From NCBI RefSeq assembly GCF_003704095.1, contig NW_020846109.1:186001-250000 (forward strand): a stretch of 64,000 nt of DNA, in the 5' to 3' direction. The DNA comes from Pocillopora damicornis. Lineage: Eukaryota. Below, piece by piece: positions 1-58,790 of this stretch (positions are counted from its first letter, which is position 1; each line of letters starts with the position of its first letter). A program made the position numbers and the translations under genes. The notes beneath the pieces were generated by a model, which saw nothing but the letters and a program-made list of their open reading frames with translations, searched no databases and was not told the origin of the DNA.

Positions 1-3000
1 GTACTCACATGAAGAAGGAGGACCTGTTCCCGCAGGATGTCGAACACTTGATCGACACCTGCGGGATTGACACGCCTCAGCAGCTACAGCGTGAGCAAAA
101 TTTCATTTCCTAGTACTTTTGAGTAAAGATATGATCACTGTGATTGTTTTACAGGCGCATAACAGAAACACTGGGAAAGCCCTCGCACTCTTTCATCCTT
201 CATGCTCACGTTGGCCCAATTGCCCTTTGTTCTACACAGTCTCAGTCTCAGTCTGTCCAAAACCTCATATTTTTTCGATCTTTAAATCTTAGTCGCCTTC
301 ATCATTTCGGCGTCGTTCCACTCTGGATGTCGGCAAGGGTCGCTGACCCGAAATAAAAGAAGGCCTTTGGCCAACGAGCTCTTAGAGGAGCTCGGTAGTC
401 CACCTCCGGTGAGGGAGTAGGAGGATAAGCCAACTTTCCTTTGTGTAAGTATAAAATATCAGGGTCACGATAATTTGATTAAATCAGTTTCGGACAATGG
501 GTTAGTTCCCTTCTTCGATAATGTACTGTCTTTATTTCCTGACATTCAATAATTCAACTTGACTATTGTTCTTACGTTCATGCAGAAAAGACGACGATGA
601 CCACATGAAACTCACCATTGAGTTTCAAAAGGAGAAACAGGACGGTGGAAATGTTGAGTACAGGTACTCATTACAAAATTATTTAACGACAGTCATATAT
701 TCATTTTCTGCGCCAGGTATAGCTGTCGATTCCCTTCAATATGTACATATTTCTTATTTCTTATATTTTAAAAAATTTATTCGGCACCAAATGCATCGGC
801 ACAGGCTCAGACCGGTGGTGGCTTGTTTAATTATATGGTATAGATGTATTTCTGTTATGCTCTTGTTTTCCTTTGAAATATAAAAAATAAGTATTAAAAA
901 TTCTTGACCTATTTATGTTTCAGGAGACCTTTTACGTTTACCCCGTTGCATAAAGGTTCCCCTTACGACCCGGCAACCTTGGGGTTTTTGTTCCTGGCCG
1001 TAAGGGGTGCCTTTATTCTGCCTGCTAAAGAAGCATACGAGCGTGGTGACTTCCGTCTTCGAGAAGACGCGAAGTCATGGTATCTCCTTTGTGAGATAGA
1101 CCAGTCTAGTGGAGCAATCAATGTAAATATTTTCATTTTTTTTTTTATTTTCTTATAGTTCACTAGATTCTAGTCAAGGGATTTTCTGTCTTCTCCGCCC
1201 ACAGTCTCTCACTACCCATGCATGTCGACGCATGATGAAAAATAATTTCACGCAATACTTTTAAATTTAAATGTCACAAGTGATGATGTGTATGGTTAAA
1301 ATAGAATCTACTACCGTCCAGTATATCTCGTGTAATCGCAATATTTCCTTTACTCTCAGAACACCAAGCCACTACAAGGCCTTACAGCCACGTTTAATAC
1401 CCTTGTGGCTAAGGCAGGATTTGATGTGCGGAAATTAACGCATCACTGTAATAGATCGGTTAGTTTAAAAAAAGAAATTTCTTCTTTCTTCATTCATATC
1501 ATATTACTTTACCTTTAAACAAATGTTGTCCATTTGATAATGATCTTATAGTTACTGTTTTTCATCTTTATAACAGGGTATGGCCACGACATTTATAATA
1601 AATGAAACTATTAAGAATAATGGTACTTTTCCGAGGGAAAGTGTGGCCACCCTGTGCCGTCTGGGCGGCTGGTCCGAAAAAAGTGGAACGTGGTCACTAT
1701 ACGTGAAGGATGTTTTTGAAAAACACCTTGACACGAGTTCCTTTCTCTATCGGTAAGGATCCCAGCATATCTTTTCCTTTGGAAAACTCAGTATATCGAT
1801 TAATCGAAGCAATGTTTACGGCATTAAGGGGGAAATGATAATCAAAATATATAAAAGATAATTTCTGATGAATGATGAAATAAAAGGTTTGTTAAAGAAA
1901 TGAGCTTTGTGGCAAGTTTCGTTTGGAAAGCGACATAATTCGGTTGTTATCTATGAGAATTGAAACAAAATATCTTTTTTGGCCGCACAAAAGTGAAAGC
2001 TATTCTCTTCGTTATTTTCAGCGACCTCCGTCCAGACAACAGGGCAACCTACCTGGAAGATATAAAATCCGCCTTCAATTACCGAGTAGATAAAAACCTC
2101 CAAACAATGGAGGATTGCCACGCCGTAGAGGGTTTTGCAGGATACCCGCACGAATTCAGAGACACTGGTCTGAACATTTCGATCGGGGAGGCAGAGAAAG
2201 GTGATTACTTTTAATTTTCTGCATGTAATAAACCAATTGATCACATGTGACGATATGTGAATTTAACTTTTCTTTTTTTCCTACAGAACTTGAAAAAATG
2301 AAAAAAGGAGAAAGTGCTGAAAAGGTGCTTTACATAGATCCCTTGTTTGAATCATTGTTTTCGATTGTGGTCAAAGTCACAGACCCCAAGATTTAGTTTA
2401 ATTCATTTTTGCATTGATATTATATTCTCACATTTGATAAATAGTGAATTTCAATTTCCTTTTGTGCTCCCAGGAATGACAATGAAGGGCCTCACATTTA
2501 AAATAAAAGCCCTGAAACAACAGGCTGTGTTTCGCTTTGCCTCCGCATACAACGCGAAACAACACGATGAGGCCAGGGCGAAAAATCCACCACCGCACCC
2601 AAACAAACTTGTAAGTAGTCAAACATATTTGAAATGTTCTCTTGCTTGCATTGACATCTTTTTCGTAATTTCACATTAATCAGTCCCGCTTAAAAATTTT
2701 ATTAGTTACACTCACGGCCATTTGGTTTTGTCCATTTTCCTTATTAGGGGTTTACAAAACCACTGAATATGTTAGGCCACTTGAAATTCTTGTTGGAGTC
2801 AGAGAGGGGGGAAGATCTTTCCCTAAGGAGATTTTCTCCCCTCGATTACTCTATGAAGCTATCTGGACCTGTAGAGTGCCCGTTTGAAGGTTGTGGGTTC
2901 CAAACAGATCTCGGCAAGACAATGATCAGCCACCAGCAGGAGGTGCGCCACCCTGGTTGGAATCGGCACGATACCACCAGGGAAGGCCAATCTAAGCCTT

Positions 3001-3224
3001 GGCATTGCGGTCTGAGGACATGCCAGAAGGCTTTCCCAACGTGGGACGGGTGCTACAAGCATATGCAGTCCCACAGCAAGCCTCTGGCATGTCCTGTTTG
3101 CGAAAGTTTCAGGACAGACCGAATGCCAAGGCTTAAGAAACATCTCAAAGAAGTGCATGGACAACAAAACGTAGGAAGCGGCCACTTCTCGAGGAAGAGT
3201 GGAAGTAAATTCCTCGCAAAGTGA
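1..3224 (+). mobile_element. Intron-rich tyrosine recombinase + 3x C2H2 zinc-finger gene (DUF3435/Starship-captain-like or Crypton-like YR element); 5' end may lie outside window, probably degenerate
   Basis: Manual GT-AG splicing gives exons <1-90, 293-408 (or -444), 586-663, 924-1122, 1360-1458, 1577-1752, 2022-2200, 2287-2324, 2474-2610, 2748-3224. Translation: KKEDLFPQDVEHLI..QLAFIISASFHSGCRQGSL (Arg 331-333)..LTIEFQKEKQD..YDPATLGFLFLAVRGAF..KLTHHCNRSG (HxxR 1444-1455)..LCRLGGWSEKSGTWSLY (Trp 1670, Tyr 1700)..HLDTSSFL, then CPFEGC..H..H, CGLRTC..H..H, CPVC..H..H. Phases match from exon 3 to exon 8 and exon 9 to 10. The exon 2/3 join is ambiguous, and exon 8 lacks 4 nt relative to the second copy. 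Confidence 0.8.
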
Positions 3225-4564: not shown

Positions 4565-5194
4565 CACAACGATATAGTGGAGGAAACTTTAATTAATTAA
4601 TTCTTATTTTCCTTGGTTCTATCGCCCTCAGTTTTTTCTCTTTCGGCCTTGTGATAAATGCAAATAGTTACTGACTAAACATCTGCTTGAACTGAAGAGT
4701 CGATGAAACCTTTTATTCCTCAGCTGGCAAAGCTCTTATCCTTCTGTTAAGACCCACAACAATTGTCTCTCATGACACAAGAGTTCCTATGCCTGACTTA
4801 AAGAAAGAATACCCGTTGAAAATATATCGCCCCAGACTTCACTGAGGTTACTTTTTTGGTCTCGACCGTCTTCATCCTAAATTCACTCCCTCCTTTCTTT
4901 CCTTTCTCAATTCCTTGCTATTTATCTATGGATCAGTTGACCTTAAATTTTTCTCAATGAACAACTGCTCTTTGTTTCACGCACATGTGCAAAAAGTATT
5001 GTTCCGAAACGTTAATCCCGGAGTCCATTTGGCGTCCTTTGTCCAGATTCAAATTTTCTTGATTTCCCCCACGCGGCATTTTCCGCGCTTTAATTACTTC
5101 CAGCCTTTGTTCCTTGCCCTCGAGGCAGTTTCCAAGCCTATTTCGTCCCATTTTCCTTCCAAACGTCACCCTAGGTGCTTCTTCGATTCTAGAA

Positions 5195-7675
5195 ATGCCA
5201 AGGAAGCGTAAGCATTCGAGTGAAGAAGAAGAGGAGGAGGCAGAAGAAGTTGAAAATAATATTCGAGCGAAGCGGCGCGCTGCTGTGGAAGCACGTGATC
5301 GAGTAGCGGCTAAGGAAGGCGCGAGCGACGATGAAGACGAAGAAGATGACCTGGATGAGGAGGACGACGACGACAAAGATGAAGATTACGAAGGGGAAGG
5401 AGTAGGAGATGAAGAAGGAGACGAGGAAGGTGATGAAGATGATGAGGAAGAGGAAGAAAATGACGGCGCTGGAGGAGCAGAGGGCGAAGATGACGACGAA
5501 GACGATGAAGAAGTCGAAGATGAGGAACAAGAACCGGATACAGTTGAATGCATTCTGGCTGATTTGGAGGAACCAACGTCAGGTATTTTATCTATTTATT
5601 CAGCTATTTTTTGTCTTAATTTCCGATAAGGTTGCAAAATTTTTCCACGGCGCTTCGTAAATTGCTATTATCCCTCGTTTCGTGATCAAATCGCGTGTTC
5701 AGTCGCGCGCGATGGAACACGACTACAGGATTTTGATTGAAATATTGAGCTCGAGTTTAGCGTGTTTTCGAGATAAATGTTTTCCGCCGGATCATTATTA
5801 GGAGAAAAAAGTTTAGACAGATACGTAACCTAAAAAAGAAATTCTCCGTGATTTAGCTTGTGTGTTGTTGAATCCCCTTTTGTCTCCTAATCGTCTTTTG
5901 TCAGGTTTACGCGGAGCACGTGGAAAATTTTCTGTAGTTGGGAACGCTCTCATGATTTGGCATATCTTTTGGTTATTTTGGCTATTCTTTATCGGCACAG
6001 CTGATAAACTTGTGTTTTAAACCACTTCCGCTTGGATTCTTGATGTCAAATTTAATTTATAAACAAATAACTAGTCGTTTGATTGTAAGTTGCCAAAGTA
6101 CAAAGAATTAAGCGTTATTCTATCTCAAAGCTTTATATCTTTGACGGATAAGCGAAAAATAGTTGTTTGCTGTCTTAGTCTTGTAAGTTCATTAATATCA
6201 TCCTTTACTTATATGCATGTGATTAAGGAAGGCACTAAAGATGAAATACTCTGTTGTGTGGCATCTACCAATAGTCTGTGGCTAGATCGTTGCACTGACG
6301 TCATAAGCTTCAATCATATAATTTTAAGTCTTTGACTTAGTTACTTAGAGCAGATAACATCTGTAATACCGTTTGAAGATTTAGCACCTAATGTGTTATT
6401 ATCCAAATACACAGATCTAAAATTGGGGAAAGCAAAATTTGTGTTTAAGATAAACTTGAGAATACCTTTACCAAGACATTAAGAGATGCTAAAATTAGGA
6501 TAAACTTTTCCAACGATTTTGAACTCAAAGGAATTAGAGGATGGGTTCTGATCTGTTTGATATTAACTCTGGAGACCTAGCAGTGATCTGAAATACCACC
6601 CTGTGCACATGAAATATTGTTATGACCTAATACTTATTATGGTGATATGGTTACTCTAAAATTTCTCTTCTTGACCCTTTGATCTTTTAAGAGAAACTAG
6701 TTTCTAATTTCTCCTTCAGTATCATCCCTGAATCACACATTATGGTCAGGAGAATAAGTGAAATGATCACTAACAAAAGAAACCCTTAATTGTTAAAAAA
6801 AAAAACTCGCCTTGTCAGCTTGCTAGGAATTGTATTATGGAAGATACATGGGTGCAAGAAATGATTCTTAACACAAGGTTTTGTATTATACATCAGGCTT
6901 AGAAATACTATTTTTGAAATTTTACAGATACTCCAGGTTATGTCTTAAGGAAAAAAGACAGCCCCAAGAAAATGGAACTCTGTTTTATGGGAGAAATGAG
7001 GGAAACATTGGTTGATGTCACTGAAGCTTTTCAAGCACATTTTGAGGAGAAGAAACTACCTGTTCTTCAGATTACAAAATTTGACATGATAGGAGATACC
7101 AATGATACAACACAGGTAAGTTGCTGAGTGCAAGGTCTCATTCATTAACATTGTTCATCCAGGGTACCCAATACTGTTATTTCTTGTCTCATCTGTAAAT
7201 TGCTAGTAAAGGCAGCCAATCAGGTTGCCTGATTCGATCACATGGCTTTTAAATTGAGTCCTAGGAATAAAGAGGGAAGGGAAGGTTTCCACACCCAGTG
7301 TAAAAACGTTTTTAAGTGTGCTCCTTAACTATTAATAAAAAACTGTTGTTAACTTTTGCTTGCAATCAAATTTGTAGCAATGGGTATATATTATTGCCAG
7401 GTGTATCATAAACTTTATTAGTGTTCTGGTAAAATGACATTCAAAAGGCATTATAGTTCTTTGAATAGTTTTCTTTGTACTCACTCAGTGGACTGTTGTT
7501 CTTTATTCACCAGGTTGATGTTTTGGAGATCAAATATGACAAGGCATATGACATCAGAGAATTAGATGATGACAGTGATGACATACTTTCACAAAATTTT
7601 TATTGTGTTGTCAGAGTAGAAGGAATTGAAGGCACTTGGGCTACACAATATTTTCTACCAGAACCTGAGGACTGA
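5195..7675 (+). CDS. Hypothetical protein with N-terminal NLS-like motif, long Asp/Glu tract and unrecognised C-terminal domain (3 exons)
   Basis: Exons 5195-5582, 6928-7115, 7514-7675 join in phase with GT-AG sites. MPRKRKH..KRR, about 80-aa D/E tract, then DTPGYVLRKKDSPKKMELCF..FYCVVRVEGIEGTWATQYFLPEPED*. Confidence 0.7.
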
Positions 7676-30130: not shown

Positions 30131-31427
30131 AAGCTAATATAGTATATCGGTAACAGGGCACTTATTGGAGGAATAAATGATTAATTACCAAAGCTTCTAT
30201 ACTGAGGGCTTATTTGAGAATGACTGGATTTGAGAAGTGTTTGATAGAAGAAGAGCTTTTTAATAATACATTGAGTGCCAACATTTTGTGTATTTTTCTT
30301 CTGAACTTTTCATCAGCTTTAATGAATACCGAATAGACACACAGCAACTTTGGTCAAGAACACCCCACCAAATCACAAGCGGATACACAGTTTTACAAAC
30401 AAAAATATTTTGTCTAGCCTAACTGTTGGGCAACTAATAAAAAGTAACAATATGCATAGCCTTATCAAAGCACCATAATTCCCTGTCTTTATTCTAAGGA
30501 TTTGTTCGGAGGGAGGGGCATGAGGAGGGAATTTTAAAGAGAGTACCATTATTTTGAGATTAGTTCAAGGACTCCCTTAAGTAGTTCAGTTTATGGGATT
30601 CCCCTGTGCTCAATTTCTTAGCAACAGTTTGTAAGCTGCTTGGAGGCTTAGGCTGCTTTGGAGGTTTAAGCTGCTTTGAAAGCTGATCCCACCCTCCCAT
30701 GGTCTTGGCTCAGGAAGTGACAATAGGCCATTTTACAGTTGTGTCCTTAGTTGCCAAGCCTTTGATTTGGAGTGAGGCTGAAGGTGACCTTGCTGTGATG
30801 GAGACCGGTATCTAGTTAGCATGATAACAAACTAATTTGCATTTGAAAAGCATAACAAGGTCAACTTTAGCCTCACTCCTGTTCAAAGGCTTGGCAACCA
30901 AGCACACAACAGCAAAATGATCTAATCAAGTAACCATTCACTGGCCAGTACCAGTCAATCCCACTGTTTATACAGTGTTTATACAGGGAAAAGAAATAGT
31001 CTCTTATGGCAAACATAAGAACATTGGTAGCATTCTTCATAGATTTTAATTTAGACAAAATCAAATGATTCTGTGACATGACACATTTTATTAATCTAGT
31101 CACATACTATATAAAGTTAGTAACAACATCTTTACTGTAAAGGACTGTTCTTCCCTGTGCTATCATTTTCACTGAAAACTAGCACAAATATCACAAGCAT
31201 TTATGTGCTTTACCGCTGCTGTTGTATGCAATGGGCCCCATTTTAACAATTTTTCAAAATATTTCAGGGTGTTTCTGAGCCTTGGCTCTTCATAAGTGAG
31301 TTTTACAGAGATATACTTATGTAGCATGTTATGCTTACTTATCTTTAGCTCATAGAACTTTTTTGTAACCTGGCACAGTTCTGGTACTGAGATAATAGGC
31401 AAGCTAAAAATTGTGGGCAAGGTCCAA
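30131..31427. repeat. Inverted paralogous segment of 36799-38386 (3' flank of caspase A)
   Basis: Reverse complement aligns collinearly with 36799/36951-38386, with many substitutions and indels. Confidence 0.85.
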
Positions 31428-31527: not shown

Positions 31528-32776
31528 GCCTTCAAATGGACACTCCACAGGTCCACTGAGCTTGAAAGAATATTCGAGGGGAGAAAATCTCCTTAAGGAG
31601 AGATCTTCCCCCCTCTCTGACTCCAACAAGAATTGCAGGTGACCTAACACATTCAGTGGTTCTGTAAACCCCTAATAAGGAAAATGGACAAAACCAAATT
31701 GCCGTGAGTGTAACTGATTAAATTTTTAAGTGGGACTGATTAATGTGAAATTATTGACTACTTACAGGTTTGTTTGGGTGCGGTGGTGGATTTTTTACCC
31801 TGGCCTCATCATGTTGTTTTGTGTTGTAGGCGGAGGCAAAGCGAAACACAGCCTGTTGTTTTAGGGCTTTTATTTTAAATATGAGGCCCTTCATTGTCAT
31901 TCCTGGGAGTAAAAAAGGACATTGAAATTCACTATGTACCAAATGTAAGAATATAATATCAATGCAAAAGTGAAGTAAACTAAATCTTGTGGTCTGTGAC
32001 TTTGACCACAATCAAAAACAATGACTCAAACAAGGAATCTGTGTAAAGCACCTTTAAATTCATCGCTTTCCCCTTTTTTCATTTTTTCAAGTTCTGTAGG
32101 AAAAAAAGAAAAGTTTAATTCACATACCGTGACATGTGATCAATTGGTTTATTGCATGCAGAAAATTGAAATTAAAAGTAATCACCTTTCTCAGCATCCC
32201 CGATCGAAATGTTGAGACTAGTGTCTCTGAAATCTTGCAGGTACCCTGCAAAGCCCTCTATGGCATGGCAATTCTCCATTGTTTGGAGGTTTTTTTCTAC
32301 CCTGTAATTGTATGCTGATTTTATGCCTTCCAGTTAGGTTGTCCTGTTGTCTGGACGGAGGTCGCTGAAAATTACGAAGAGAATAACAGTCACTTTTGTG
32401 CGGTCAAAAAAAATACTTTATTTTAATTCTCATAGATAACCACCGAATTATGTGGCTTTCCACACGAAACTTGCCACAAAGCTCATTTCTTTAACAAACC
32501 TTTTGTTTCATCGTTCATCAGAAATAATCTTTTATATATTTTGATTATCATTTCCCCCTTTATGCCGTAAACATTGCTTCGATTAATTGATATACTGACT
32601 TTTCCATAGGAAAAGATATGCTGAGATCCTTACCGATAGAGGGATGAACTTGTGTCCAGATGTTTTTCAAAAACATCCTTAACATACAACGACCATGTTC
32701 CACTTTTTTCCGACCAGCCGCCCAGACGGCACAGGGTGGCCACACTTTCCCTGGGAAAAGTACCATTGTTTTTTAA
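31528..32776 (-). pseudogene. Second, diverged copy of the YR-zinc finger element (partial, gap-bounded)
   Basis: Reverse complement matches about 1610-2892 including introns: KNNGTFPRESVATLCRLGGWSEKSGTWSLYVKDVFEKHLD..ELEKMKKGESDEFK..GMTMKGLIFKIKALKQQAVFRFASAY..LKFLLESERG-equivalent..CPFEG. One exon has an in-frame TAA (TAC in copy 1) and a 1-nt deletion. Confidence 0.88.
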
Positions 32777-34375: not shown

Positions 34376-36524
34376 ATGGAGAGCGCTAAGTTGAGGTCGA
34401 TTCCGAAGAAAACAAGTGAAAGATATTTTCTTTGCGAAATATGCCGAAGTCTTTTAGAGCGATTTCGTCGATGTGAATACTTAAAGTTGGATGGAAAAGG
34501 ATGCAACTGCGTGAATGAAGATGACGAGGGAGTCTCTAACGAATGTGAAGGATTCTATCAAGATAGCAGTTCTCAAACGGAATTGATGCACGGTGAGGGT
34601 TTTTTTCTTAAGTAAAGTAAAAAAAAGTATTGATGTTTGCGTCGTCCTTTAGAAATTCCTCGAGGCTTCTCCTTTCGTCAGCAAAGGGCGCAAAAATCGA
34701 AATGAGGGATCAATCGGTACTATTACATCATATTCCGTTGTAAGTTTGACAAGTCTGACTGAAAAAGCTCCATGTTACGTGATTGAAGTAATAACTAATA
34801 TTAAAGATCGAAGAACGACACGATGTTAAAGTTGAATTATTTGTCATCTTTTATCAGCTCCGCCTTCGACTTCTCAAGGGTTGGTCTATCAACTATCAGA
34901 TTCGCCTGCATATATGCATGCATCTCAAATACTCGATTTAAGTCCAAGAAACTTTCTCTTCGCAAGAGATAATCTTCCAAAAGATCAAGAGTATCGAGAA
35001 ATACGGAATCCCTACGTGCTGGTGATTAACATTGTAAACTTTATCAAGGACCCACGACCAAGGAATGGGGCTAAACACGATCAAGATAACGTGGAGAGGT
35101 TTGTCAGAGAAGCTGGTTTCAGCAATGTTCTGATGCATTTTGACCTGGACAAACAAGGAATGCTGAAAATTCTTGAAGAAACCCGAAAAAATGCAGATTT
35201 GGGTCAGTAGCTCTACATGTAGTCTCTATTTTTGTTACATCCATGAGGGTTCGTGCACTTTAAGTTTCGATTAGACCGGAAGTTAGCTGCTGTAGCAAAG
35301 TAATAGCGGATCTCGCAGAGCGTAGCCCCATAATTATACAAAATAGCAGTAACCCATCAAGCCGAAAAAATTTGGGTGTACGACCGTACAAGGTGCTACT
35401 TTTAACATGCGTGGTCAACTGTACCGCGGGCACGCCAACGCCACGGTTTTGTCCAGTAGTCCAGTGGTCAGTGCACTGGGCTCCGAGTCGGACGACCCGG
35501 GTTCTAGTCCTGGCCAGGGCAAGGCGTTGTGCCCTTGAGACGTGCGGGAAAAAATATGCGAGCTCCGCTTTTAGGCTTGGCTAAATATATATATTTTACT
35601 CCTAAAGTGTTAGGTTCTAAAAAAAGATTTCCTATTGCCATATCTATTTGCAACGTTTCCAACTTCTACTCCCCAATTCTATGGCGTCCAGAAGAGGTGT
35701 AATTCAAAGTTTGATTTGTCTAAAATGAGTATGAAGATCTCAGAATTTTTTCCTTGTTCACTGATAAAAGCACTCACAGGAAGGTGTGGTATTAAAACCA
35801 AAGGGAAATTCTGAGTTGCCAAAATAATTTTTTGCCTAAATTATATTGCAGTGAAGCTCCCTCTACCTCTGTTCAATACTTTGAATTGCAACTGATGCAA
35901 TATTGATTTCCTTTGTTATTCCGTACAGTTGAAAATGACAGTTTTATCTGCATTATTATGAGCCATGGCAACGAAGAAGGTATTTTATGCAGAGATCATA
36001 AAACTATTTCAGTGGAGACCATAATGGAGAAATTCCAGGGAAACAATGATGCTTGTCCTCAGCTTGCAACAAAACCAAAATTGTTCTTTGTTCAAGCATG
36101 CAGAGGAGAAATTGATGACAAAGGGTACTTTGCACCAAGAGGGCCAAAAGAAGTTAATCCTGATACATCTGACAACAATGAGATGCCTGTAAAACTTCCC
36201 TCTGATGCAGATTTTTTGATCGCCTACTCTACCACCAAAGGCACAATCTCTCACAGACGCTTCACAGTTGACAGAAGATATGCTGAAACACATAAGGAAA
36301 GTCTGGGTTCCTGGTTCATCTCTTGCTTAGTACAGGTTCTATGTGAGAACTCTCACAAGGAGGACTTAATGACTATGCTCACAAGAGTGAACAGAGCCAT
36401 GTGTGAATTTTACACTGAAGGTGGAAGCAAGCAGATTTCATGCCAACTTTCTATGCTCACAAGGAAAGTCTACTTTTCTAACTTCCTTGATAAGAAAAAG
36501 TGTGTGGGCAGCAACACAAATTAG
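34376..36524 (+). CDS. Caspase family protease A (about 385 aa, 3 exons, no CARD/DED recognised)
   Basis: Exons 34376-34592, 34858-35202, 35929-36524 in phase. LVINIVNF, RNGAKHD, ICIIMSHG (His), KPKLFFVQACRG (Cys), DFLIAYST, GSWFI, MLTRVN, SMLTRKVYF. Confidence 0.92.
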
Positions 36525-38388
36525 GCAAACCTTGACGACCAAACTGTGTTAATGGTGGCAGGGATTAGGGTGGAGCCAGGAAGTGGAAAGGGGTACCACC
36601 CTTTTTATTAATTTGTGGTGAGCCCTTCAACTCCCAATGTACAGAAATTTGTAGAAACAAATAACATCCTCAGCTGACGGGTTTGTTGTTGCTTCTTTTA
36701 CTTTTCTTGGATGGACTGTTGTTATGAACAAATTGTACAGCCTTCTGAAAGTGAACAAAAAGAGTTCAAATAAGTACTATCAACCTTCATCACTGTTTTG
36801 GACCTTGCCCACAATTTTTAGCTTGCCTATTATCTCAGTACCAGAACTGTNNNNNNNNNNNNNNNNNNNNNNNNNNNNNNNNNNNNNNNNNNNNNNNNNN
36901 NNNNNNNNNNNNNNNNNNNNNNNNNNNNNNNNNNNNNNNNNNNNNNNNNNTTGGACCTTGCCCACAATTTTTAGCTTGCCTATTATCTCAGTACCAGAAC
37001 TGTGACAGGTTACAAAAAAGTTCTATGAACTAAAGATTATTAAGCATTACATGCTACATAAGTATATTTCTGTAAAACTCATTTATGAAGAAGAGCCAAG
37101 GCTCAGAAACACCCTGAAATATTTTGGAAATTGTTAAAATGGGGCCAGTTGCATACAACAGCAGCAGTAAAGCACATAAATGTATATGATATTCATGCTA
37201 GTTTTCAGTGAAAATAAAGATGTTGTTACCATCTTTATAAAGTACATGACTAGATTAATAAAATGTGTTATGACACAGAATCATTTGATTCTGTCTAGAG
37301 TAAAATCTATGAAAATGCTACCAATGTTCTTATGTTTGCCATAAGAGACTCTTTCCTTTCCCTTCCCTCCCCTCCTTCAAAGCAGGCAGTGGTGGTATAA
37401 ACAGTGGGATTGACTGGTACTGGCCAGTGAATGGTTACTTGATTAGATCATTTTGCTGTTGTGTGCTTGGTTGTCAAGCCTTTGAACAGGAGTGAGGCTA
37501 AGGTTGACCTTGTTATGATAAAAAACCTTGTTGCCTTTCAAATGCAAATAAGTTTGTTATCATGCTAACTAGATACTGGTCTCCATCACAACAAGGTCAC
37601 CTTCAGCCTCACTCCAAATCAAAGGCTTGACAACTTAGGACACAACTGTAGAATGGCTTATTGTCAGTTCCTAAGCCAAGACCATGGGGGGGGGAGGGGG
37701 GAAGGGAGGGTGGGATTAGCTTTAAAAGCAGCTTAAACCTCCAAAGCAGCTTACAAACTGCTGCTAAGAAATTGAGCAAGGGGAATCCCATTAGCTGAAT
37801 TATTTAAGAAAGTCCTTGAACTAATCTCAAAATAATAGTACTCTCTTTAAAATTCCCTCCTTATGCCCAACCCTCTCAACAAATCCTCAGAATAAAGACA
37901 GGGAATTATGATGCTTTGATAAGGCTATGCGTATTGTTACTTATTAATAATTGCCCAATAGTTAGGCTAGAAAAATAAATTAGTCTGTAAAGCTGTGTAT
38001 CCACTTGTGATCTGGTGAGGTGTTCTCGACCAAAGTTGCTGTCTATTCAGTATTCATTAAAGCTAATGAAAAGTTCAGAAGAAAATGTTGGCACTCAATG
38101 TGTTATTAAGAAGCTCTTCCTCTTCCCAGACCCACTCATTCTCANNNNNNNNNNNNNNNNNNNNNNNNNNNNNNNNNNNNNNNNNNNNNNNNNNNNNNNN
38201 NNNNNNNNNNNNNNNNNNNNNNNNNNNNNNNNNNNNNNNNNNNNCACTCAATGTGTTATTAAGAAGCTCTTCCTCTTCCCAGACCCACTCATTCTCAAAT
38301 ACGCCCTCAGTATAGAAGTTTTAACTGGTAATTGATCATGTACTTCCTCCAATAAGTGCCCTGACACCGATTCAATATTTCAGCTTGT

Positions 38389-38641
38389 AGATTCTACGGT
38401 GAACGGAGAAAGACACAGCGAAAAATTGGGCTCTTGGTTCATCTCCTGCTTGGTGAAGGTTCTACAAGAAAATTCGCACGTTGACGACTTAATGACAATG
38501 CTGACTAAAGTGAATCAAGAAATGATCAAATATAGGACAGATGGTGGAAGCAAACAGATTCCATGCCATCTCACCATGCTCACGAGAAAAGTCTACTTTG
38601 CAAATTTCTTTGATAAGAACCGGCCTCAGACTTGCCCTTGA
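38389..38641 (+). pseudogene. 3'-terminal fragment of caspase B, part of the inverted duplicate 38389-39821 of 39922-41308
   Basis: Near-identical reverse complement of 41057-41308; lacks the catalytic SHG/QACRG region. Confidence 0.75.
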
Positions 38642-39132
38642 ACCAGAGACATCTGAATAGTAATTACTTCTTTTAGTTGCGATAATCTTTCTAGTAAATG
38701 GACATGTTTTAGCTAATAGCGTTGTCATATCAGTTCATCTATTGGCTGGGAGGACTTACATTTAGAAGTAGAACAAACTGCAAATAACCCCCACCCTCTC
38801 CCGCTCAGTAGCTAGAACTTCTCATCCAAAAATAACGCTTTTGTACTTGTTTTGAAAGGTGGTTCATGGAATAAAATAGTAAAATATTTTCCTCCGACAT
38901 AGATAATACGTTGCCTATCCAGAGTAAGTAGTCCAAGCAGTTGCGATACTGATTTTTTCATTTAACCAAGGGTAAATACTAAAACTGTAACTTGATAAGT
39001 TTGAATTTTACATGTACAGTTGTTAATAAAGGTTAACTGTCAACAGCACTTGAACAGAATAATTTGAGACACGGTTTGGTGCTACTCTGGTTTAAAGATT
39101 TATTGAATGTAACCGAGAAGTTGCAATACAGA

Positions 39133-39800
39133 GACCCAACCTTTTCGACAATCCTGTCTACTGCCTTTATCAGGGGTGATCTAATCGCTGTAACAAGAGG
39201 TCCTTTTATACACTCACTAATTAGCTGCCCTTTTTTTCTAATGAGGTGCAAGATAATTTTGAATTGCCAAGTGAATTTTGAATACCAAAGAGAATTTTGA
39301 ATAGCTACAACGTTAAAGTTGCTCAAAAACCTTTTCAGACTTTAGGGTTTATTTTTTCCTAAACGTAAGGATCCTGTCACGAAAGAACAACGAACCGACG
39401 CTATTCATTTTATTGCGTACGATGTTTGTGATCACGAGTATATCAGGCAGACCAAACGATAGTTTGGTACACGTTTGAAAGAGCGTCAAAAAGCTGTCTT
39501 CTTTTACAAAAAAGAAAATTCAGCTTTGACGAAGTGCATGCTTAACTAACCATAAAAATGGGTGGGATAAGCTAAAATTATCACCCCCTAATCGGCGTCA
39601 CTACCAACGCTTTTTTCGGAAGCCTGGCGTATCATCTCCGCCCTCTTGATGATGACAGCTTACAACCTGAGGCCTATTTACACCTCGTCAGAAAAAAGGG
39701 CAGCTGATTAGTGGGCAAATGGAAGGACCTCTTGTTGCAGCGATTAGATCATCCCTGATGAAGACAATAGACAGGAGTGTCGAAACGTTGGGTCTATGAA
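39133..39800 (+). mobile_element. Degenerate Penelope-like retroelement 3' end (inverted pLTR + GIY-YIG remnant + pLTR with hammerhead); mirrored at about 39922-40570
   Basis: About 39340-39530 translates as ..KDPVTKEQRTDAIHFIAYDVCDHEYIRQTKR*FGTRLKERQKAV..ENSAL, the decayed PLE GIY-YIG pattern. 39133-39250 is an inverted copy of 39680-39795. Confidence 0.75.
39746..39795 (+). ncRNA. Minimal type I hammerhead ribozyme of the Penelope pLTR
   Basis: CTGATGA (39755-39761), stem II GACA/TGTC, GAAA (39782-39785), palindromic AACGTT in place of stem III, stem I ATCC/GGGT. Confidence 0.65.
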
Positions 39801-41056
39801 TTATAACTTCTCGATTACGTTNNNNNNNNNNNNNNNNNNNNNNNNNNNNNNNNNNNNNNNNNNNNNNNNNNNNNNNNNNNNNNNNNNNNNNNNNNNNNNN
39901 NNNNNNNNNNNNNNNNNNNNNTCCTGTCTAGTGCCTTCATCAGGGATGATCTAATCGCTGCAACAAGAGGTCCTTCTATTTGCCCACTAATTAGCTGCCC
40001 TTTTTTCTGACGAGGTGTAAATAGGCCTCAGGTTGTAAGCTGTCATCATCAAGAGGGCGGAGATGATACGCCAGGCTTCCGAAAAAAGCGTTGGTAGTGA
40101 CGCCGATTAGGGGGTGATAATTTTAGCTTATCCCACCCATTTGTATGGTTAGTTAAGCATGCGCTCAGTCAATGCTGAATTTTCTTTTTTGTAAAAGAAG
40201 ACAGCTTTTTGACGCTCTTTCAAACGTGTACCAAACTATCGTTTGGTCTGCCCGATATACTCGTGATCACAGTCATCGTACGGAATAAAATGAATAGCGT
40301 CGGTTCGTTGTTCCTTCGTGACAGGATCCTTACGTTTAGGAAAAAATAAACCCTAAAGTCTGAAAAGGTTTTTGAGCAACTTTAACGTTGTAGCTATTCA
40401 AAATTCTCTTTGGTATTCAAAATTCACTTGGTAATTCAAAATTATCTTGCACCTCATTAGAAAAAAAGGGCAGCTAATTAGTGAGTGTATAAAAGGACCT
40501 CTTGTTACAGCGATTAGATCACCCCTGATAAAGGCAGTAGACAGGATTGTCGTAAAGGTTGGGTCTCTGAATTGTAACTTTTTGGTTACATTCAATAAAT
40601 CTTTAAACCAGAGTAGCACCAAACCATGTCTCAAATTATTCTGTTCAAGTGCTGTTGACAGTAAACCTTTATTAACAACTGTACATGTAAAATTCAAACT
40701 TATCAAGTTACAGTTTTAGTATTTACCCTTGGTTAAATGAAAATATCAGTATCGCAACTGCTTGGACTACTTACTCTGGATAGGCAACGTATTATCTATG
40801 TCGGAGGAAAATATTTTACTATTTTATTCCATGAACCACCTTTCAAAACAAGTACAAAAGCGTTATTTTTGGATGAGAAGTTCTAGCTACTGAGCGGGAG
40901 AGGGTGGGGGTTATTTGCAGTTTGTTCTACTTCTAAATGTAAGTCCTCCCAGCCAATAGATGAGCTGATATGACAACGCTATTAGTTAAAACATGTCCAT
41001 TTACTAGAAAGTTTATCGCAACTAAAAGAAGTAATTACTATTCAGATGTCTCTGGT

Positions 41057-42908
41057 TCAAGGGCAAGTTTGAGGCCGGTTCTTATCAAAGAAATTTGCAA
41101 AGTAGACTTTTCTCGTGAGCATGGTGAGATGGCATGGAATCTGTTTGCTTCCACCATCTGTCCTATATTTGATCATTTCTTGATTCACTTTAGTCAGCAT
41201 TGTCATTAAGTCGTCAACGTGCGAATTTTCTTGTAGAACCTTCACCAAGCAGGAGATGAACCAAGAGCCCAATTTTTCGCTGTGTCTTTCTCCGTTCACC
41301 GTAGAATCTGTGAACCTCCTGTGAGAGATACAGCCCGCGGTGGTCGAGTAGCTGATCAAAAAATCTGCCTCAGAAGGAAGTTTTACAGGCAACTCCTCGC
41401 TCTGGTCGCTATCAGCAACAACATTGTCTGATTCTTGCCCATTGGTGACCCAATACCCTTTGTCGTCAACTTTGCCGCGACATGCTTGAATGAAGAACAG
41501 TTTGGGTTTTCCCACCAGCTGGGGACACGACTCTTTGCCACCACGAAATTTAGCGGTTATTTCGTCTACTGGAATGGTTTCACCGTGCTTGCATAGGATT
41601 CCTGTCTCATTACCATGGCTCATGATAATGCAGATGAATGCGTCATGTTTACCTGCAAAAAAAGAAATGATTAGATAAATGGTAAATATTCAAGAGTCGT
41701 TTAATTACATAGACAGATCCTCCCCTAAATTTGAAAATAGTCTTTAAATTCGCTCTGAGTGGTTCAGAAAACTTGTACCACTCTCTCAACCGATCAGATG
41801 CAAAACTATAACCAATCACGATTTGGTCACCGACAATTTTCCGCGCTTTTGGTGGTTGGCTTGTTTTACGTTCGTTCTGTAGGGTATTTTCCTTTCTCTG
41901 TATTTGCCTCGTTCTTAATTTGGTTTTGTTGTTAGGATACGCGATCGAAAAGCGCTCTAAGTACAGTAACTGAACTTTCGGTCCATATCCTCATTCGGTA
42001 GTCTTATTCCCTTTTGATCACGCGTAATCTTTTCCTAGGTTGGAAAGAAGGAGCTTTGCGTAGCAAGACTCAACAACGGATACAGAGAGTTGGTAGACTA
42101 GGCATTTGGTGACTTGTCATAAAACCTGTTTGAGGTAGTGTAGAGAAACTTACCCAATTCTCTGTTTTTGCGGATTTCGTCAAGGATGTCTACGATCTCC
42201 TGTTTTGTTAAGTCCCCGTGCTGCCTTACAGCTTGGAAACCAGCTTCTTTAGCAAATTTCTCCACTTTTCTGAGGTCGAATTTAGCTCCATTTCTTGGAA
42301 CTGGGTCTCTGATGAAATTTACGTTGTTTATTACTAAAACATATGGATTCCGTACTCCATCGTACACTTGATCGTTCTGATGGTCTCTGGCTTTTGCAAA
42401 GTTCAGATACGTATCTGCCATTTGTGGATTAGCTGTCATGGAATCAAAGGCTTGAAATACAGATACTTGTCCTTGATTGTCCGGCGAACCTGCAGTGAAA
42501 TAGTTACAAATACGTATTCAAGATTTATTTCAGTAATCATTCTTCAACGATACGAGATGTTTGGCTCACCGAACTAGACAAATCATCCTTTGTATAATTT
42601 CACGTAGCCTCGAAAACTGAAACGAATTTATTTCATCGAAAAAAAAAATGTGAGGCTTGATACATGACCGGATGCGTACATCACTTAGTTCATTATGATT
42701 AGAATGCGATCGGTCGTTTTACATTGCCAGGCTCCAAAATCCTTTAGGATCCTGCTGGTGAAAAATCATGGTCATGTTTTAGTATGAATAGAACGTAAAA
42801 CATACCATTCTTTACTTCCTCGTGAGAGCTTCCATCTTCCGAAGTTGCTTTAATGGTATGTTCCTCTTCAACCTCTCTGATCAACCACTTAATTATAGAG
42901 TTGCCCAT
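41057..42908 (-). CDS. Caspase family protease B (about 344 aa, 3 exons, short prodomain starting MGNS)
   Basis: Exons 42908-42806, 42489-42154, 41652-41057 in phase. RNGAKFD, ICIIMSHG, KPKLFFIQACRG, GSWFI. Same intron phases and same 596-nt last exon as caspase A. Confidence 0.92.
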
Positions 42909-55898: not shown

Positions 55899-58089
55899 GA
55901 GACTGGGGACCAGCGTGCGTTGTCACCCGAGCCTCGGTTTCAAGCTTGGTTATAACTACGTTTGCTATAAACTTATTTCTAAAAGAATATTTCCAACAGG
56001 TGGTAGGCCAAAGTCTACTTTGAAAACTACTCGTTAAAGATGCTGTGAGCTTTCACCGCACTGCCCCAATACTAGCCTTACATGAAAATTCTCGTTTTCG
56101 TAATTCGTAAATTTTCGTTTGACTTGCACCGTGAGGAATGGGTTAGGAACGAAAGAATTTTTGTCTCTTCTGGTCAGTTCCTAATCTTTCCTAATTTCGT
56201 ATGAATTCTTCACTTATATCCTCTGAGTATGGAAGAGGCTCGAGAGTTAAACAATGGGTGGGTCCCCTGCGAACTTCATATTGGAATTTAGGAACAATAC
56301 AATATTTTTATCGACATAAATTATTTCTTTTTAAAAAGCAGGAGGGTACCCAAGGAGGCTCCACTCCCGCCTCGCCTAGCCGCGCCCATGAGTTCCTAAG
56401 AGACCAATACGAATGAAGAGTACCTCTATTCAAGAACTGGCGTCAAACATACTAACGGTATTCAGAGAAATCTTCGATTCAACTCGGAACTTTTTTTGAA
56501 CGAATCCAATGCTAATATGCTAATAATTTGTTTTTAGAGACAAGAGCAAGTTAAAAATTTAACGGTCAAAAGGCGCATAAATTACTATTATAATAATTAG
56601 TCGTGGAAAATACGACATATAGAAGATTTTTATTTCTTAAATTGCTGATCGCTGGAATCGAGAAAAACAAACATTTAAGGGTTTTATATAGTTTTAAAAT
56701 TTTAATCTTATTTCTATTTTTAAAGAGTGTATTGTTCTTATCCTAATCTCATCTAATTGACGTTGAAAATAGGAAGTTGCATTTATTTATTTATTATGAA
56801 TTTATATTGTTTGGTTGTAAGAATTTGGTTGATGGTTGATGTCATTTATATTCTTGCATACATTTGACGTGTATAAAGCTTTTAATCGTTTTTTTTCTTT
56901 TTTCGCTCCCAGAAGAGTTCTCTGACGTGTTCCTGAGAAACTAAATCTCATGCACAAAGCTAAACTAAACTGGCTTCGAGGCGTCAACTGATCAAACTCT
57001 GTATTCTCGTCCATGTCTATTAATCCGTGAGGGCTTGTGATGGCCACTTAAGTGTCTTATTTATATCAAGTAGCATTTCAGTGACGAATTATTACAAATC
57101 ATCCTTTTTCCATACACCAAAAAGGAGTGGGAGGAGGGCGTGGGTACACAGGCACTGGCACCTCTCCTGAGGGCCCTTCCCCCTTTTTTTCCTCATCAGA
57201 TTTTCCCTTCCATTGACTGTAAAGACATTTATTGATCGCTGATAATTGTTACTCTGGTCTGCATTAGATGCATTTTGAAATGAAGAGAATTTGCACAATG
57301 TGTTGCTCTCTTTGTATGAAGTCCTGAGGCGACGCATACTTTTAAAAAAAATACATTTCTCCTTCAACAGGCAGCGGGAAAAAAAATATCAATTTCCTGA
57401 AGGGGTTTACGCTTTTCGAAAAGTTTGCAGATAAGGAAACGAGATGCGCTCTGATCATCTTTTTCAGCCCAGAACAAGTGTATTCTTCAATTGCTCTGTA
57501 CTAAAGAAATAGTATCATCTTTTAATTATGTTTACAGAGGGATACTGATATCTGTCAGTTTTAATGCATGTTGTTAATAAGCGATCATAGCAAATACAGT
57601 GCACATAACATGTAAATACAGTAAGGAGCATGCGCACTATTGCAACTCAGCGTATGCTGACCCAACGTCCAACGATAGCATAATTGCATGCCTCCGTCTA
57701 ACGTGGCACTGACTGTATGACACAGGTCATTTTAAAGAGTTAGAGTTTTTCAATAGCACGCATCTCATTAGATTAAGCATGTCCGTAATAGTAAGAAATT
57801 GTCCTCAAACTTTCACATCTGTAGCGACAAGAAATACACAATTCGTGCATAAATTAACATAATACTGAAAGGCTGTAACAGAGTCTCGTTGAAAATCGCT
57901 GTAAAAGGAAGATGGACATCATTCTGCACTACAACTAAATAGTCAATAAGCCTCTTGATAAATAACTGAGCCAAACTATTACAGTTATTTTTCCGTCGGT
58001 GAATGTATTTGTCGACGAGTTAATTCTTAATTTATTTTTAAAAAAGTGTAAAATAATTTTTCTTTTATCGTACAAAATTTTGTTTCTTA

Positions 58090-58790
58090 TTAATTAGCAC
58101 TGATCCTTTCTGAGTCCAAGTCGTGGTTACAAAATTGTTCCGTTTCAGTTGATCCTTCCAAAGCTGTCGTTGAACTTTTACCTCCGCTGACCGCCATACT
58201 TACCTGGTCAAAATATCCTGTCCCTACCTCCCTCTGGTGTTTATGTGCAGTAAAGCCCGATTGCGCTTGCGCAAACTCGTCCTCTTGAATCTTGGTGTTG
58301 GCAGACATACGTCACGTGCTAACTTGAAAATAGCGTGATTAAGCGAGTGGAAGCCAGCTTAGGTAATAAACTGATGTCTGTAGCCCATTTTACCAAGTTC
58401 TTTCTGAAACTCACCAATCTCTTTATCGCTGAGGTTGGCTTTCCAGTTGAAGGAAAGCGAGCAGTTGTATACGAGCGGCTTTCCTGGAAACATGGAGTGG
58501 ATTCCATCGGCAAACATGTGCGCTTCGTCCAAGTTAGGTTTACCTGTCTCGCACCAGATTACATTTACATTTACATTACAGATTAACGATCCTCGGAGTT
58601 TCTCCACCGCTTCTGGTCCATAGTCCCGTCGAATAACAGTAAATCCGTACTTTCGTGTGCAAATTTTTAACAGTGTGTTCATCTTGAGACCTTTACTAAG
58701 AGCCATTCTGGTTGAAAGTGAGAAGGTTATCCAGAGTCTGGAAAAAAGCTACTAAAATTAAACGCGGCAATACTGACCCATCGGAAGGTT
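58090..58790 (-). pseudogene. Internally deleted tandem duplicate of isocitrate lyase
   Basis: 5' part of ICL exon 1 ([13 protein letters not shown], plus upstream intron) is fused via filler DNA to the distal exon 3 ([16 protein letters not shown]). The KKCGH catalytic region is absent and the 3' part has frameshifts. Confidence 0.9.

What the first reader, a model, noticed from the sequence alone, without database searches (positions are those of the whole stretch)
31528..32776. Second YR copy differs mainly at synonymous sites in the exon compared: evidence of a protein-coding mobile family
Seen: in the first 40 or so codons of the zinc-finger exon the copies differ by many silent changes (GGC/GGT, TTG/CTG, CTT/CTC, CTA/TTA, TAC/TAT, TCT/AGT, GTA/GTG, TGC/TGT, CCG/CCA) and few replacements (M/V, K/Q, D/E, M/F). 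Splice sites and introns are kept. The lesions are complementary: copy 2 supplies the 4 nt that restore exon 8 phase, while copy 1 has TAC where copy 2 has TAA. Inference: two subfamilies diverged under purifying selection and moved as DNA (introns retained), then decayed independently. A recent local duplication would not give this pattern.
Basis: partly seen in the sequence, partly recalled or inferred. Interest (0 to 1): 0.75.

Follow-up and report, generated by a model that had tools for sequence, protein, structure and literature searches.

The report
Second coral recombinase zinc-finger gene copy
A second, inverted copy of a coral-only recombinase-like gene lies about 28 kb from the first; both were long kept by selection and are now breaking down, they look like a local gene pair and not a jumping element, and their silent coding sites differ far more than their introns do.

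Summary
Window 31528-32776 (gene on the minus strand) is a 1249-base contig between two N gaps. It matches window 1613-2890 with five exons and four introns in the same places. Over 205 codons I count 40 silent and 25 replacement changes, giving dN/dS 0.14. Copy 2 has TAA where copy 1 has TAC. Copy 1 lacks 4 bases of exon 8.

RNA contigs show three of the four copy-2 introns spliced out. Both lesions are absent from some public sequences, so the decay is recent.

The "mobile family" reading is not supported. The 234-Mb assembly holds only these two copies. They sit tail to tail on one scaffold, in a zone of other inverted duplications. Distant coral relatives share the exon ends.

New and unexplained: four-fold sites differ at 29%, but introns at only 6.9%, the same as codon positions 1 and 2. 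A plain old duplication does not predict this, and neither do two old subfamilies. Public proteins are clean one-breakpoint mosaics of the two types, so the copies exchange sequence. My best reading is a local paralogue pair with partial gene conversion.

The parts
31528..32776 (-). Copy 2: the assembled part of the second recombinase-like/zinc-finger gene, bounded by N gaps on both sides
   Evidence: Held by 20 of 24 listed runs from 7 studies.
32634..32776 (-). Copy 2 exon 6 (3' part), holding the ...LCRLGGW...SLYVKD stretch that carries the putative catalytic W and Y. 1 replacement and 14 silent changes against copy 1.
   Evidence: Spliced to exon 7 in an X17 RNA contig (joint 32364/32634).
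32365..32633 (-). Copy 2 intron 6 (269 bases, GT..AG), 20 of 269 different from copy 1
32186..32364 (-). Copy 2 exon 7, with an in-frame TAA at 32336-32334 where copy 1 has TAC
   Evidence: At 32334 the X15 contig reads the letter that gives TAC; X1, X9 and X17 keep TAA.
32094..32185 (-). Copy 2 intron 7 (92 bases; 86 in copy 1). Its splicing was not seen in the laid RNA contigs.
32052..32093 (-). Copy 2 exon 8, 42 bases, a phase 1-1 cassette. Four bases (32059-32056) are absent from copy 1.
31903..32051 (-). Copy 2 intron 8 (149 bases), removed in an X17 RNA contig
31766..31902 (-). Copy 2 exon 9
31672..31765 (-). Copy 2 intron 9 (94 bases; copy 1 has 137, a 43-base difference), removed in an X17 RNA contig
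31528..31671 (-). Copy 2 exon 10 (zinc-finger exon), first 47-48 codons only; the rest falls in the N gap
   Evidence: Public proteins of copy-2 type carry all three fingers (P0001, P0114).
1613..2890 (+). The stretch of copy 1 that is homologous to copy 2. Exons: ..-1752, 2022-2200, 2287-2324 (38 bases, frameshifting if included), 2474-2610, 2748-.
1..3224 (+). Copy 1 gene as far as it lies in the window. Exons: ..98, 292-417, 584-664, 907-1125, 1348-1458, 1577-1752, then as in the row above, zinc-finger exon to 3224.
   Evidence: tblastn with coral proteins P0112, P0113, P0150, P0026
30246..31427 (.). Flank next to copy 2, itself an inverted duplicate of 36951-38123 (83.6%). Part of a zone of nested inverted duplications at 30-42 kb.

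Best explanation
Copy 2 is the second paralogue of a resident, intron-rich gene found only in stony corals. The gene encodes a tyrosine-recombinase-like domain followed by three C2H2 zinc fingers. The two copies arose by a local inverted (segmental) duplication. They are not two insertions of a mobile family.

After the split, the proteins of both copies were kept by purifying selection. More recently both began to decay, with lesions that differ between copies and between coral lineages.

The copies still exchange sequence by gene conversion, so different parts of the gene have different depths of divergence. The exons keep an old divergence (four-fold sites 29%). The introns were homogenised later (6.9%).

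Shown: two copies only; inverted, on one scaffold; splicing and transcription of copy 2; dN/dS 0.14; polymorphic lesions; mosaic proteins.

Inferred: duplication in place; conversion as the cause of the exon/intron contrast; recombinase activity of the intact protein.
For: Copy number: 2 of 2 DNA candidates. The zinc-finger exon gave 3 matches of 17 scored candidates, the third being a weak unrelated finger hit (E 0.003, 34%) on another contig. Exon 6 gave 2 of 2. The Porites homologue P0150 gave 5 matches of 8 candidates, all inside the two loci.

Place: the copies sit tail to tail at 1-3224 (+) and 31528-32776 (-). Other inverted duplicates lie beside copy 2: 30246-31427~38123-36951 at 83.6%, 38389-39776~41309-39922 at 98%, and a caspase-like pair at 71%.

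Copy 2 is real and expressed. 14 of 24 listed runs hold at least half of its sampled words, and 6 RNA runs hold 0.21-0.38. X17 oligo-dT RNA contigs carry three joints, at exactly the predicted GT..AG boundaries.

Selection: Sd 40/132.7 against Nd 25/482.3.

Recent decay: TAA appears in 3 of 4 laid runs and TAC in 1. P0003 is copy-1 type with exon 8 in frame but is broken elsewhere. Of 5 exon differences between the assembly and the X15 contig, 4 are replacement or nonsense changes.

Exchange: of the 15 listed members of the P0001 cluster, 2 (P0116, P0117) have 8 of 8 copy-1 states up to alignment column 75 and then 8 of 8 copy-2 states. Outgroups P0002, P0004 and P0007 show that the copy-2 states there are derived. 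X9 and X15 contigs over 31754-31859 mix copy-1, copy-2 and new states.

Host-gene character: a distant member, L015, and the coral proteins end their exon matches at the same residues as copy 1. Only exon cores align, at 72-79%.
Against: Gene conversion has no known reason to spare five exons and hit four introns as short as 86-269 bases. Exon 6 has only one replacement that selection could protect, yet it has 14 silent differences. Intron differences are evenly spread and do not pile up at exon edges. The mosaics show that exchange also happens inside an exon.

Copy 2 is a short contig between N gaps, so its place and orientation in the scaffold rest on the scaffolder alone. The flanks of the two copies share nothing, so a duplicated block larger than the gene is not shown.

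The assembly may be incomplete, so further copies could be missing. Third-type sequences occur in runs X9, X15 and X17.
Confidence: 0.55

Rival explanations
1. Two subfamilies of a protein-coding DNA element (Crypton-like, moving with its introns) diverged under selection for their own recombinase. Each inserted here independently and then decayed.
For: dN/dS is 0.14 with deep silent divergence, including Ser TCT/AGT and Arg CGA/AGG codon-family switches. The zinc-finger exon family is diverse in public data: 23 of 111 hits at E<=1e-10. Cryptons have no terminal inverted repeats and are hard to delimit (PMC3212892, passages read). Third sequence types appear in other runs.
Against: There are only two copies in 234 Mb, both on one scaffold. 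Their introns are 93% identical, which two old subfamilies would not keep. The family's exon ends are shared with distant corals whose introns do not align, as expected for a vertically inherited gene. There were 0 relatives among 12 pattern matches in viral contigs. No ends or target-site repeats could be looked for, because of the gaps.
Confidence: 0.12
2. The duplication is young, with its age given by the introns (about 7%). The exons alone then received extra, mostly silent, changes. One route is patches copied from a third, more diverged family member that shares homology only in its exons, or that has no introns. Another is some exon-limited mutation process filtered by selection on the protein.
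For: Codon positions 1+2 (23 of 412) equal the introns (41 of 598, p=0.43), while third positions stand alone at 43 of 206. The transition:transversion ratio is similar at four-fold sites (11:11) and in introns (22:19), so the same kind of mutation is at work. Homology-limited copying would stop at exon ends by itself. Third-type states are seen in exon 9 (X9, X15), and an exon-7-like variant is seen in X17.
Against: No donor exists in the assembly. Polarising exon 6 with L015 shows no asymmetry between the copies: 4 sites against 5, with 6 uninformative. Within the copy-2 lineage, third positions do not change faster than introns: 3 of 142 against 14 of 510, and a threefold excess is rejected at p=0.003. 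That argues against a standing exon-specific mutation rate.
Confidence: 0.18
3. Assembly artefact: copy 2 is a misplaced haplotype or a chimeric gap-fill contig of copy 1.
For: It is a 1249-base contig between two 100-N gaps, in a zone with a 98% palindrome centred on another gap.
Against: There are 108 mismatches in 1235 bases, with a clear codon pattern. Contigs of independent runs match copy 2 across exon-intron borders with 0 other letters (X9 records 19, 21, 22; X1 records 6, 8), and one X15 contig covers 937 bases. Separate public protein clusters exist for copy-1 type (P0151-P0153: 37, 33 and 118 members) and for copy-2 type (P0001: 61 members).
Confidence: 0.03

Closest known systems
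Crypton DNA transposons (tyrosine-recombinase elements of fungi, oomycetes and animals, including Nematostella)
   Same: A eukaryotic recombinase-like protein with a C-terminal DNA-binding part. Low copy number and no obvious terminal repeats. The nearest look-alike clusters by language-model features carry Phage_integrase, DUF3504 and NDC10_II. Crypton features are taken from PMC3212892, passages read.
   Different: No Pfam hit at all. At least ten exons, with ends shared among distant corals. Three C2H2 fingers in place of GCR1_C. Only two linked copies. No ends defined.
Crypton-derived host genes (DUF3504 genes: KCTD1, KIAA1958, ZMYM2-4, QRICH1, WOC)
   Same: A recombinase-derived domain fused to zinc fingers, in a spliced, low-copy host gene under purifying selection (PMC3212892, abstract and passages).
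   Different: Those genes lack most catalytic residues and are old and widely conserved. Here HHCNR, GGW and SLY are still readable, the family is seen only in stony corals, and both copies in this genome are broken.
Fungal DUF3435 proteins (Starship 'captains' and relatives)
   Same: The best structural look-alike of the Atlas model of P0112 residues 225-490 is a DUF3435 cluster labelled C2H2-type domain-containing (TM 0.67).
   Different: No HMM match to PF11917. No cargo-carrying element is seen. This is an animal host.
Duplicated genes with islands of divergence under gene conversion (for example human RHD/RHCE; MHC genes with homogenised introns). Recalled from memory, not from any call.
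   Same: Paralogues that exchange sequence, yet keep parts of their exons more diverged than the neighbouring introns.
   Different: In those cases selected amino-acid differences mark the islands. Here the excess is almost purely silent, and it recurs in all five exons.

Membership tests
Crypton (mobile tyrosine-recombinase element) | Encoded tyrosine recombinase with the R-H-R-Y catalytic residues | tested here: inconclusive
   No Pfam family for the recombinase part of copy 1 exons or of P0026, P0112, P0113. No PHROG. A profile of four coral proteins found no recombinase in the PDB. The AlphaFold single-sequence model failed, pLDDT 32. ESM Atlas look-alikes are all recombinase-type: features 0.95 NDC10_II, 0.94 Phage_integrase, 0.93 DUF3504; structure TM 0.67 DUF3435 and 0.53 bacterial integrase. 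HHCNR, GGW and SLY are read by eye.
Crypton (mobile tyrosine-recombinase element) | Several dispersed copies, or presence/absence between individuals | tested here: not met
   Two copies only, both on one scaffold. Copy 2 is held by DNA-type runs from several studies.
Crypton (mobile tyrosine-recombinase element) | Defined ends with short direct repeats | not testable with these tools
   Copy 2 ends in N gaps on both sides. The 5' limit of copy 1 is not defined: the N-terminal ~230 residues of P0112 were not found within 7 kb upstream.
Domesticated recombinase-derived host gene | Purifying selection on the coding frame | tested here: met
   dN/dS 0.14 over 205 codons, p=1e-13. But both copies now carry a stop or a frameshift.
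Domesticated recombinase-derived host gene | Same locus in related species (synteny) | not testable with these tools
   No coral genome other than G000 can be read here. Only exon ends shared with L015 and with named coral proteins could be shown.
Local segmental duplication with gene conversion | Copies linked, in a region with other duplications | tested here: met
   Caveat: the contig is placed between gaps by scaffolding.
Local segmental duplication with gene conversion | Mosaic sequences between the two types | tested here: met
   P0116 and P0117 (2 of 15 listed cluster members) switch from 8 of 8 copy-1 states to 8 of 8 copy-2 states at one point. P0160 is probably similar (not aligned).
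Local segmental duplication with gene conversion | Duplicated flanks beyond the gene | tested here: inconclusive
   No similarity between the assembled flanks, but N gaps lie directly at both ends of copy 2.

The most novel reading that the evidence does not exclude
A process that tells exons from introns has acted on this pair. One possibility is that the exons of a young duplicate were recoded at silent sites by copying from spliced or intron-less relatives (RNA- or cDNA-templated, or homology-limited conversion). The other is that the introns alone were swapped between two old paralogues. Either would be a rarely documented mode of paralogue evolution, visible here as four-fold sites four times more diverged than the introns between them.
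Probability: 0.2. Interest if true: 0.75.

Novelty: new variant of a known kind. Interest (0 to 1): 0.5.

Why it matters
The pair settles how the coral recombinase/zinc-finger gene should be read in this genome. It is a small resident gene pair in decay, not an active mobile family.

It also offers a clean natural case in which silent sites and introns of one gene give clocks that differ four-fold. If that contrast comes from exchange between paralogues, silent-site dating of duplicates in corals can be badly off. The locus would then be a handy test bed for how conversion tracts relate to exon structure.

Tried and rejected
Base composition and CpG as the cause of the exon/intron contrast. 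Giving the introns the composition of third positions predicts about 10% difference against 21% seen. Without CpG-context sites the figures are 29 of 183 against 36 of 572. This explains part of the contrast only.

Constraint on the introns. The differences are evenly spread, and the longest identical runs are 23-77 bases. There is no Rfam match in the introns at E<=1: the 2 weak hits both score far below their gathering thresholds (one lies on the minus strand inside intron 6, the other in the zinc-finger exon). No open frame runs through them.

A standing higher mutation rate in exons. Within the copy-2 lineage, introns change at least as fast (14 of 510 against 5 of 427). The counts are small, and slightly harmful variants could blur this.

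Other pairs in the window used as controls. The caspase-like pair has alignable exons (71%) and unalignable introns. The isocitrate-lyase fragment shows third positions 13 of 158 and non-coding sequence 14 of 64. Both behave normally, but both are small samples.

Fold proof of the recombinase. The single-sequence AlphaFold model was unusable. An alignment with separate exon rows was poor (A2) and was not folded.

Searches that found no relative: metagenome contigs with the zinc-finger exon, 0 relatives of 115 pattern matches; viral contigs, 0 of 12. A literature search for homogenised introns gave 2 unrelated silk-gene papers, seen as a listing only. No claim is made here about what is or is not in print.

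Searches were done exon by exon. dN/dS was summed from whole codons of each exon. Split codons, the TAA codon and the three codons after the exon-8 indel were left out.

Supplements of papers were not consulted.
Full report
WHAT IS THERE

The window is G000:C2744:186001-250000 of a 234-Mb assembly in 4393 contigs.

The finding's stretch, 31528-32776, is a 1249-base contig between two 100-N gaps. BLASTN against the whole window gives one non-self match: window 2890-1613 on the other strand, 87.5% over 1288 columns. So the gene reads on the minus strand in copy 2 and on the plus strand in copy 1. The two copies face each other tail to tail, about 28 kb apart.

GENE MODEL

tblastn with named coral proteins places copy-1 exons at ..98, 292-417, 584-664, 907-1125, 1348-1458, 1577-1752, 2022-2200, 2474-2610 and 2748-3224. 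Exon 8 (2287-2324) was placed from the reading frame and its splice sites. The proteins used were P0112 and P0113 (Desmophyllum pertusum), P0150 (Porites lobata) and P0026 (Oculina patagonica); the names come.

The part shared with copy 2 covers the end of exon 6, exons 7-9, the first 47-48 codons of the zinc-finger exon 10, and introns 6-9. All eight intron ends are GT..AG in both copies.

CHECKING THE OBSERVATION

I counted whole codons exon by exon and never joined exons. The Nei-Gojobori counts are:

| Exon | Silent differences / sites | Replacement differences / sites |
|---|---|---|
| E6 | 14 / 30.5 | 1 / 104.5 |
| E7 | 10 / 37.2 | 11 / 136.8 |
| E8 | 2 / 4.7 | 1 / 25.3 |
| E9 | 5 / 28.5 | 4 / 106.5 |
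| E10 | 9 / 31.8 | 8 / 109.2 |
| Total | 40 / 132.7 | 25 / 482.3 |

This gives dS 0.39, dN 0.054 and dN/dS 0.14, Fisher p=1e-13.

Copy 2 has TAA at 32336-32334 where copy 1 has TAC (2050-2052). Exon 8 is 42 bases in copy 2 and 38 in copy 1. In copy 2 exon 8 is a phase 1-1 cassette. In copy 1 its inclusion shifts the frame, while skipping it would keep the frame. That last point is inference and was not tested.

COPY 2 IS REAL, SPLICED AND TRANSCRIBED

Of 24 listed public runs, 20 hold the stretch or part of it. 14 hold at least half of its sampled words, and 6 are RNA runs holding 0.21-0.38. The runs come from 7 studies.

I laid 4 runs. The oligo-dT RNA run X17 has contigs with three joints: 31670/31765, 31901/32051 and 32364/32634. 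All are CT..AC on the plus strand, and all fall at exactly the predicted ends of introns 9, 8 and 6.

Intron 7 was not seen removed. The other RNA-library run, X15, gave an unspliced 1476-letter contig, which could be pre-mRNA or DNA.

Contigs from X9 and X1 match copy 2 across exon-intron borders with no other letters. Contigs and public proteins run past both ends of the contig, so copy 2 is cut by the gaps and is not a short fragment. I did not use any of those letters for the gaps.

THE LESIONS ARE RECENT AND LINEAGE-SPECIFIC

At 32334, X1, X9 and X17 keep the stop. The X15 contig reads the letter that makes TAC.

P0003 is a public protein of copy-1 type. It reads ...GESAEFK..., which means it has the four bases that copy 1 lacks here, but it is frameshifted inside the zinc-finger exon.

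Copy-2-type proteins (P0001, P0114) keep all three fingers but have a shifted tail after the last finger. The tail of copy 1 agrees with the outgroup P0004.

Of the 19 differences between the X15 contig and the assembly's copy 2 over 937 bases:
- 9 are the copy-1 state, 9 are new and 1 is a third state.
- 14 lie in 510 intron bases and 5 in 427 exon bases.
- 4 of the 5 exon differences are replacement or nonsense changes.

Recent evolution therefore looks relaxed.

IS IT A MOBILE FAMILY?

Within the assembly, only the two loci match:
- DNA: 2 of 2 candidates.
- Exon 6 protein: 2 of 2.
- Zinc-finger exon: 3 matches of 17 scored candidates, the third a weak finger-only hit at E 0.003 on another contig.
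- Porites homologue P0150: 5 matches of 8 candidates, all inside the two loci.

The surroundings of copy 2 are a patchwork of inverted duplications broken by gaps: 30246-31427~38123-36951 (83.6%), 38389-39776~41309-39922 (98%), and two caspase-like genes at 71%. The assembled flanks of the two copies share nothing.

Outside this genome the zinc-finger exon has 111 relatives at E<=0.001, 23 of them at E<=1e-10. All the named ones come from stony corals: Stylophora pistillata, Desmophyllum pertusum, Oculina patagonica and Porites lobata.

One metagenome contig, L015, carries a distant member whose exon matches end at the same residues as in copy 1. Only exon cores align to copy 1, at 72-79%, and the introns do not align. 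No relative turned up in viral contigs, 0 of 12 pattern matches.

Taken together, this is a small, vertically inherited, intron-rich gene family with a local pair here. Mobility is not excluded for the family's past, but nothing tested supports it for these two copies.

IS IT A TYROSINE RECOMBINASE?

No HMM-based test was positive: Pfam, PHROGs, a PDB profile.

The ESM Atlas look-alikes of P0112 residues 225-490 are all recombinase-type. By features: NDC10_II 0.95, Phage_integrase 0.94, DUF3504 0.93. By structure: DUF3435 at TM 0.67 and a bacterial integrase at TM 0.53. The tool itself calls these leads, not proof.

HHCNR, GGW and SLY can be read in the sequence. The last two lie in exon 6 and are intact in both copies.

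I therefore write 'recombinase-like'.

THE UNEXPECTED PART

The introns are closer than the exons: 41 of 598 against 67 of 637, p=0.03.

| Site class | Differences | Share |
|---|---|---|
| Codon position 1 | 14 of 206 | |
| Codon position 2 | 9 of 206 | |
| Positions 1+2 together | 23 of 412 | 5.6% |
| Codon position 3 | 43 of 206 | 21% |
| Four-fold sites | 22 of 76 | 29% (Jukes-Cantor 0.37) |
| Introns | 41 of 598 | 6.9% |

- Four-fold sites against introns: p=1e-7.
- Third positions against introns: p=1e-7.
- Positions 1+2 against introns: p=0.43.

Every exon's third-position value (11-29%) exceeds every intron's value (4.3-8.7%).

Explanations I tested:
- Composition and CpG explain about half at most.
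- Intron differences are evenly spread, and no known RNA family lies in the introns.
- Within the copy-2 lineage, third positions do not run ahead of introns: 3 of 142 against 14 of 510. A threefold excess is rejected at p=0.003.
- Two other duplicated pairs in the same window behave normally.
- Polarising exon 6 with L015 shows no asymmetry between the copies: 4 against 5, with 6 uninformative. Third positions against L015 are near saturation, 25-28 of 45.

So neither 'two old subfamilies' nor 'one plain duplication' fits. Exons and introns have different histories.

EVIDENCE FOR EXCHANGE BETWEEN THE COPIES

I examined the 15 listed members of the P0001 protein cluster (61 members, 40 read by the tool, 15 listed):
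- 3 are copy-2 type.
- 10 form a third group. They are 171 aa long, start at an internal Met, have a copy-1 state at one site and a third state at another, and are otherwise copy-2 type.
- 2 (P0116, P0117) are clean mosaics. They carry 8 of 8 copy-1 states up to alignment column 75, and then 8 of 8 copy-2 states from column 102 on.

Outgroups P0002, P0004 and P0007 carry the copy-1 states at three of those later sites (S, F, R). So the copy-2 block on a copy-1 background is a transfer and not an ancestral arrangement.

Contigs of X9 and X15 over 31754-31859 mix copy-1, copy-2 and new states.

HOW IT MOST LIKELY WORKS

1. A resident recombinase-like/zinc-finger gene was duplicated in place, in inverted orientation.
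2. Both products were kept by selection for a long time.
3. Gene conversion between the copies went on, and it erased intron divergence more than exon divergence.
4. Lately both copies lost constraint, and they now carry lesions that differ between copies and lineages.

The weak step is the third. I can name reasons why exons would be spared, but I tested none of them. Selection might act against transfers that carry paralogue-specific residues or lesions. Breaks might fall preferentially in AT-rich, nucleosome-poor introns. Heteroduplexes might be rejected once exons are dense in mismatches. Exon 6, with one replacement and 14 silent changes, fits the first reason badly.

The main rival for this step is the reverse order: a young duplication whose exons alone took up silent changes from a third relative that shares only exon homology. 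That would stop at exon ends by itself, but it needs a donor that the assembly does not hold.

COMPARISON WITH WHAT IS KNOWN

The closest kinds are Crypton elements and the host genes derived from them (PMC3212892; abstract and passages read, search listing). Fungal DUF3435 proteins are the closest by predicted fold. Membership in any of these is not shown by HMMs.

As a mode of evolution, the closest cases I know are duplicated genes with islands of divergence under gene conversion (RHD/RHCE; MHC introns). I recall these from memory, not from a call.

VERDICT

The selection inference and the independent-decay inference are supported. The mobile-family inference is not supported. A new, robust and unexplained exon/intron contrast has been added.

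LIMITS
- One gene pair and 1.25 kb of sequence.
- The scaffold position of copy 2 is unverified.
- All laid runs were contigs, so there is no depth or strand information.
- No other coral genome could be read for synteny.

Noticed in passing
window 38389-39776 and 39922-41309: A 98% inverted repeat (1388 bases), exactly centred on the N gap 39822-39921. It could be a true palindrome or a scaffolding artefact. It includes the 3' part of a caspase-like exon.
   Followed up: no
window 35913-36524 (+) and 41057-41623 (-): Two caspase-like open frames with QACRG, inverted relative to each other. Their exons are about 71% identical and their introns do not align. A second exon pair lies at 34980-35217 ~ 42376-42139.
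   Followed up: partly
window 58082-58790 versus 60489-60984 and 62956-63162: A partial, internally deleted copy of the isocitrate-lyase-like gene at 60497-63162 (-). The open frame 58359-58706 fuses a first-exon piece to a last-exon piece. Identity is about 92%. Third positions differ at 13 of 158, upstream non-coding sequence at 14 of 64.
   Followed up: partly
window 32087 (run X17, record 12): A spliced RNA contig runs exon 10, 9, 8 of copy 2 and then continues for 66 letters that are not the 3' end of copy-2 exon 7. By eye these letters resemble the 5' part of an exon-7 variant with Tyr in place of the stop. This could be alternative splicing, a third paralogue or a chimeric contig.
   Followed up: no
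window 31754-31859 (runs X9, X15): Short contigs carry the 43 bases that copy 2 lacks in intron 9, together with a mix of copy-1, copy-2 and new states in exon 9. In X9 they occur beside reference-type contigs.
   Followed up: partly
L015:145-3483: A metagenome contig (3936 bases, GC 39%) with a distant member of the family. It includes the N-terminal exon that was not found upstream of copy 1, and it has a stop inside the exon-7-like match.
   Followed up: partly
window 5114-5629 (+): An open frame for a very acidic Glu/Asp-rich protein, just downstream of copy 1.
   Followed up: no
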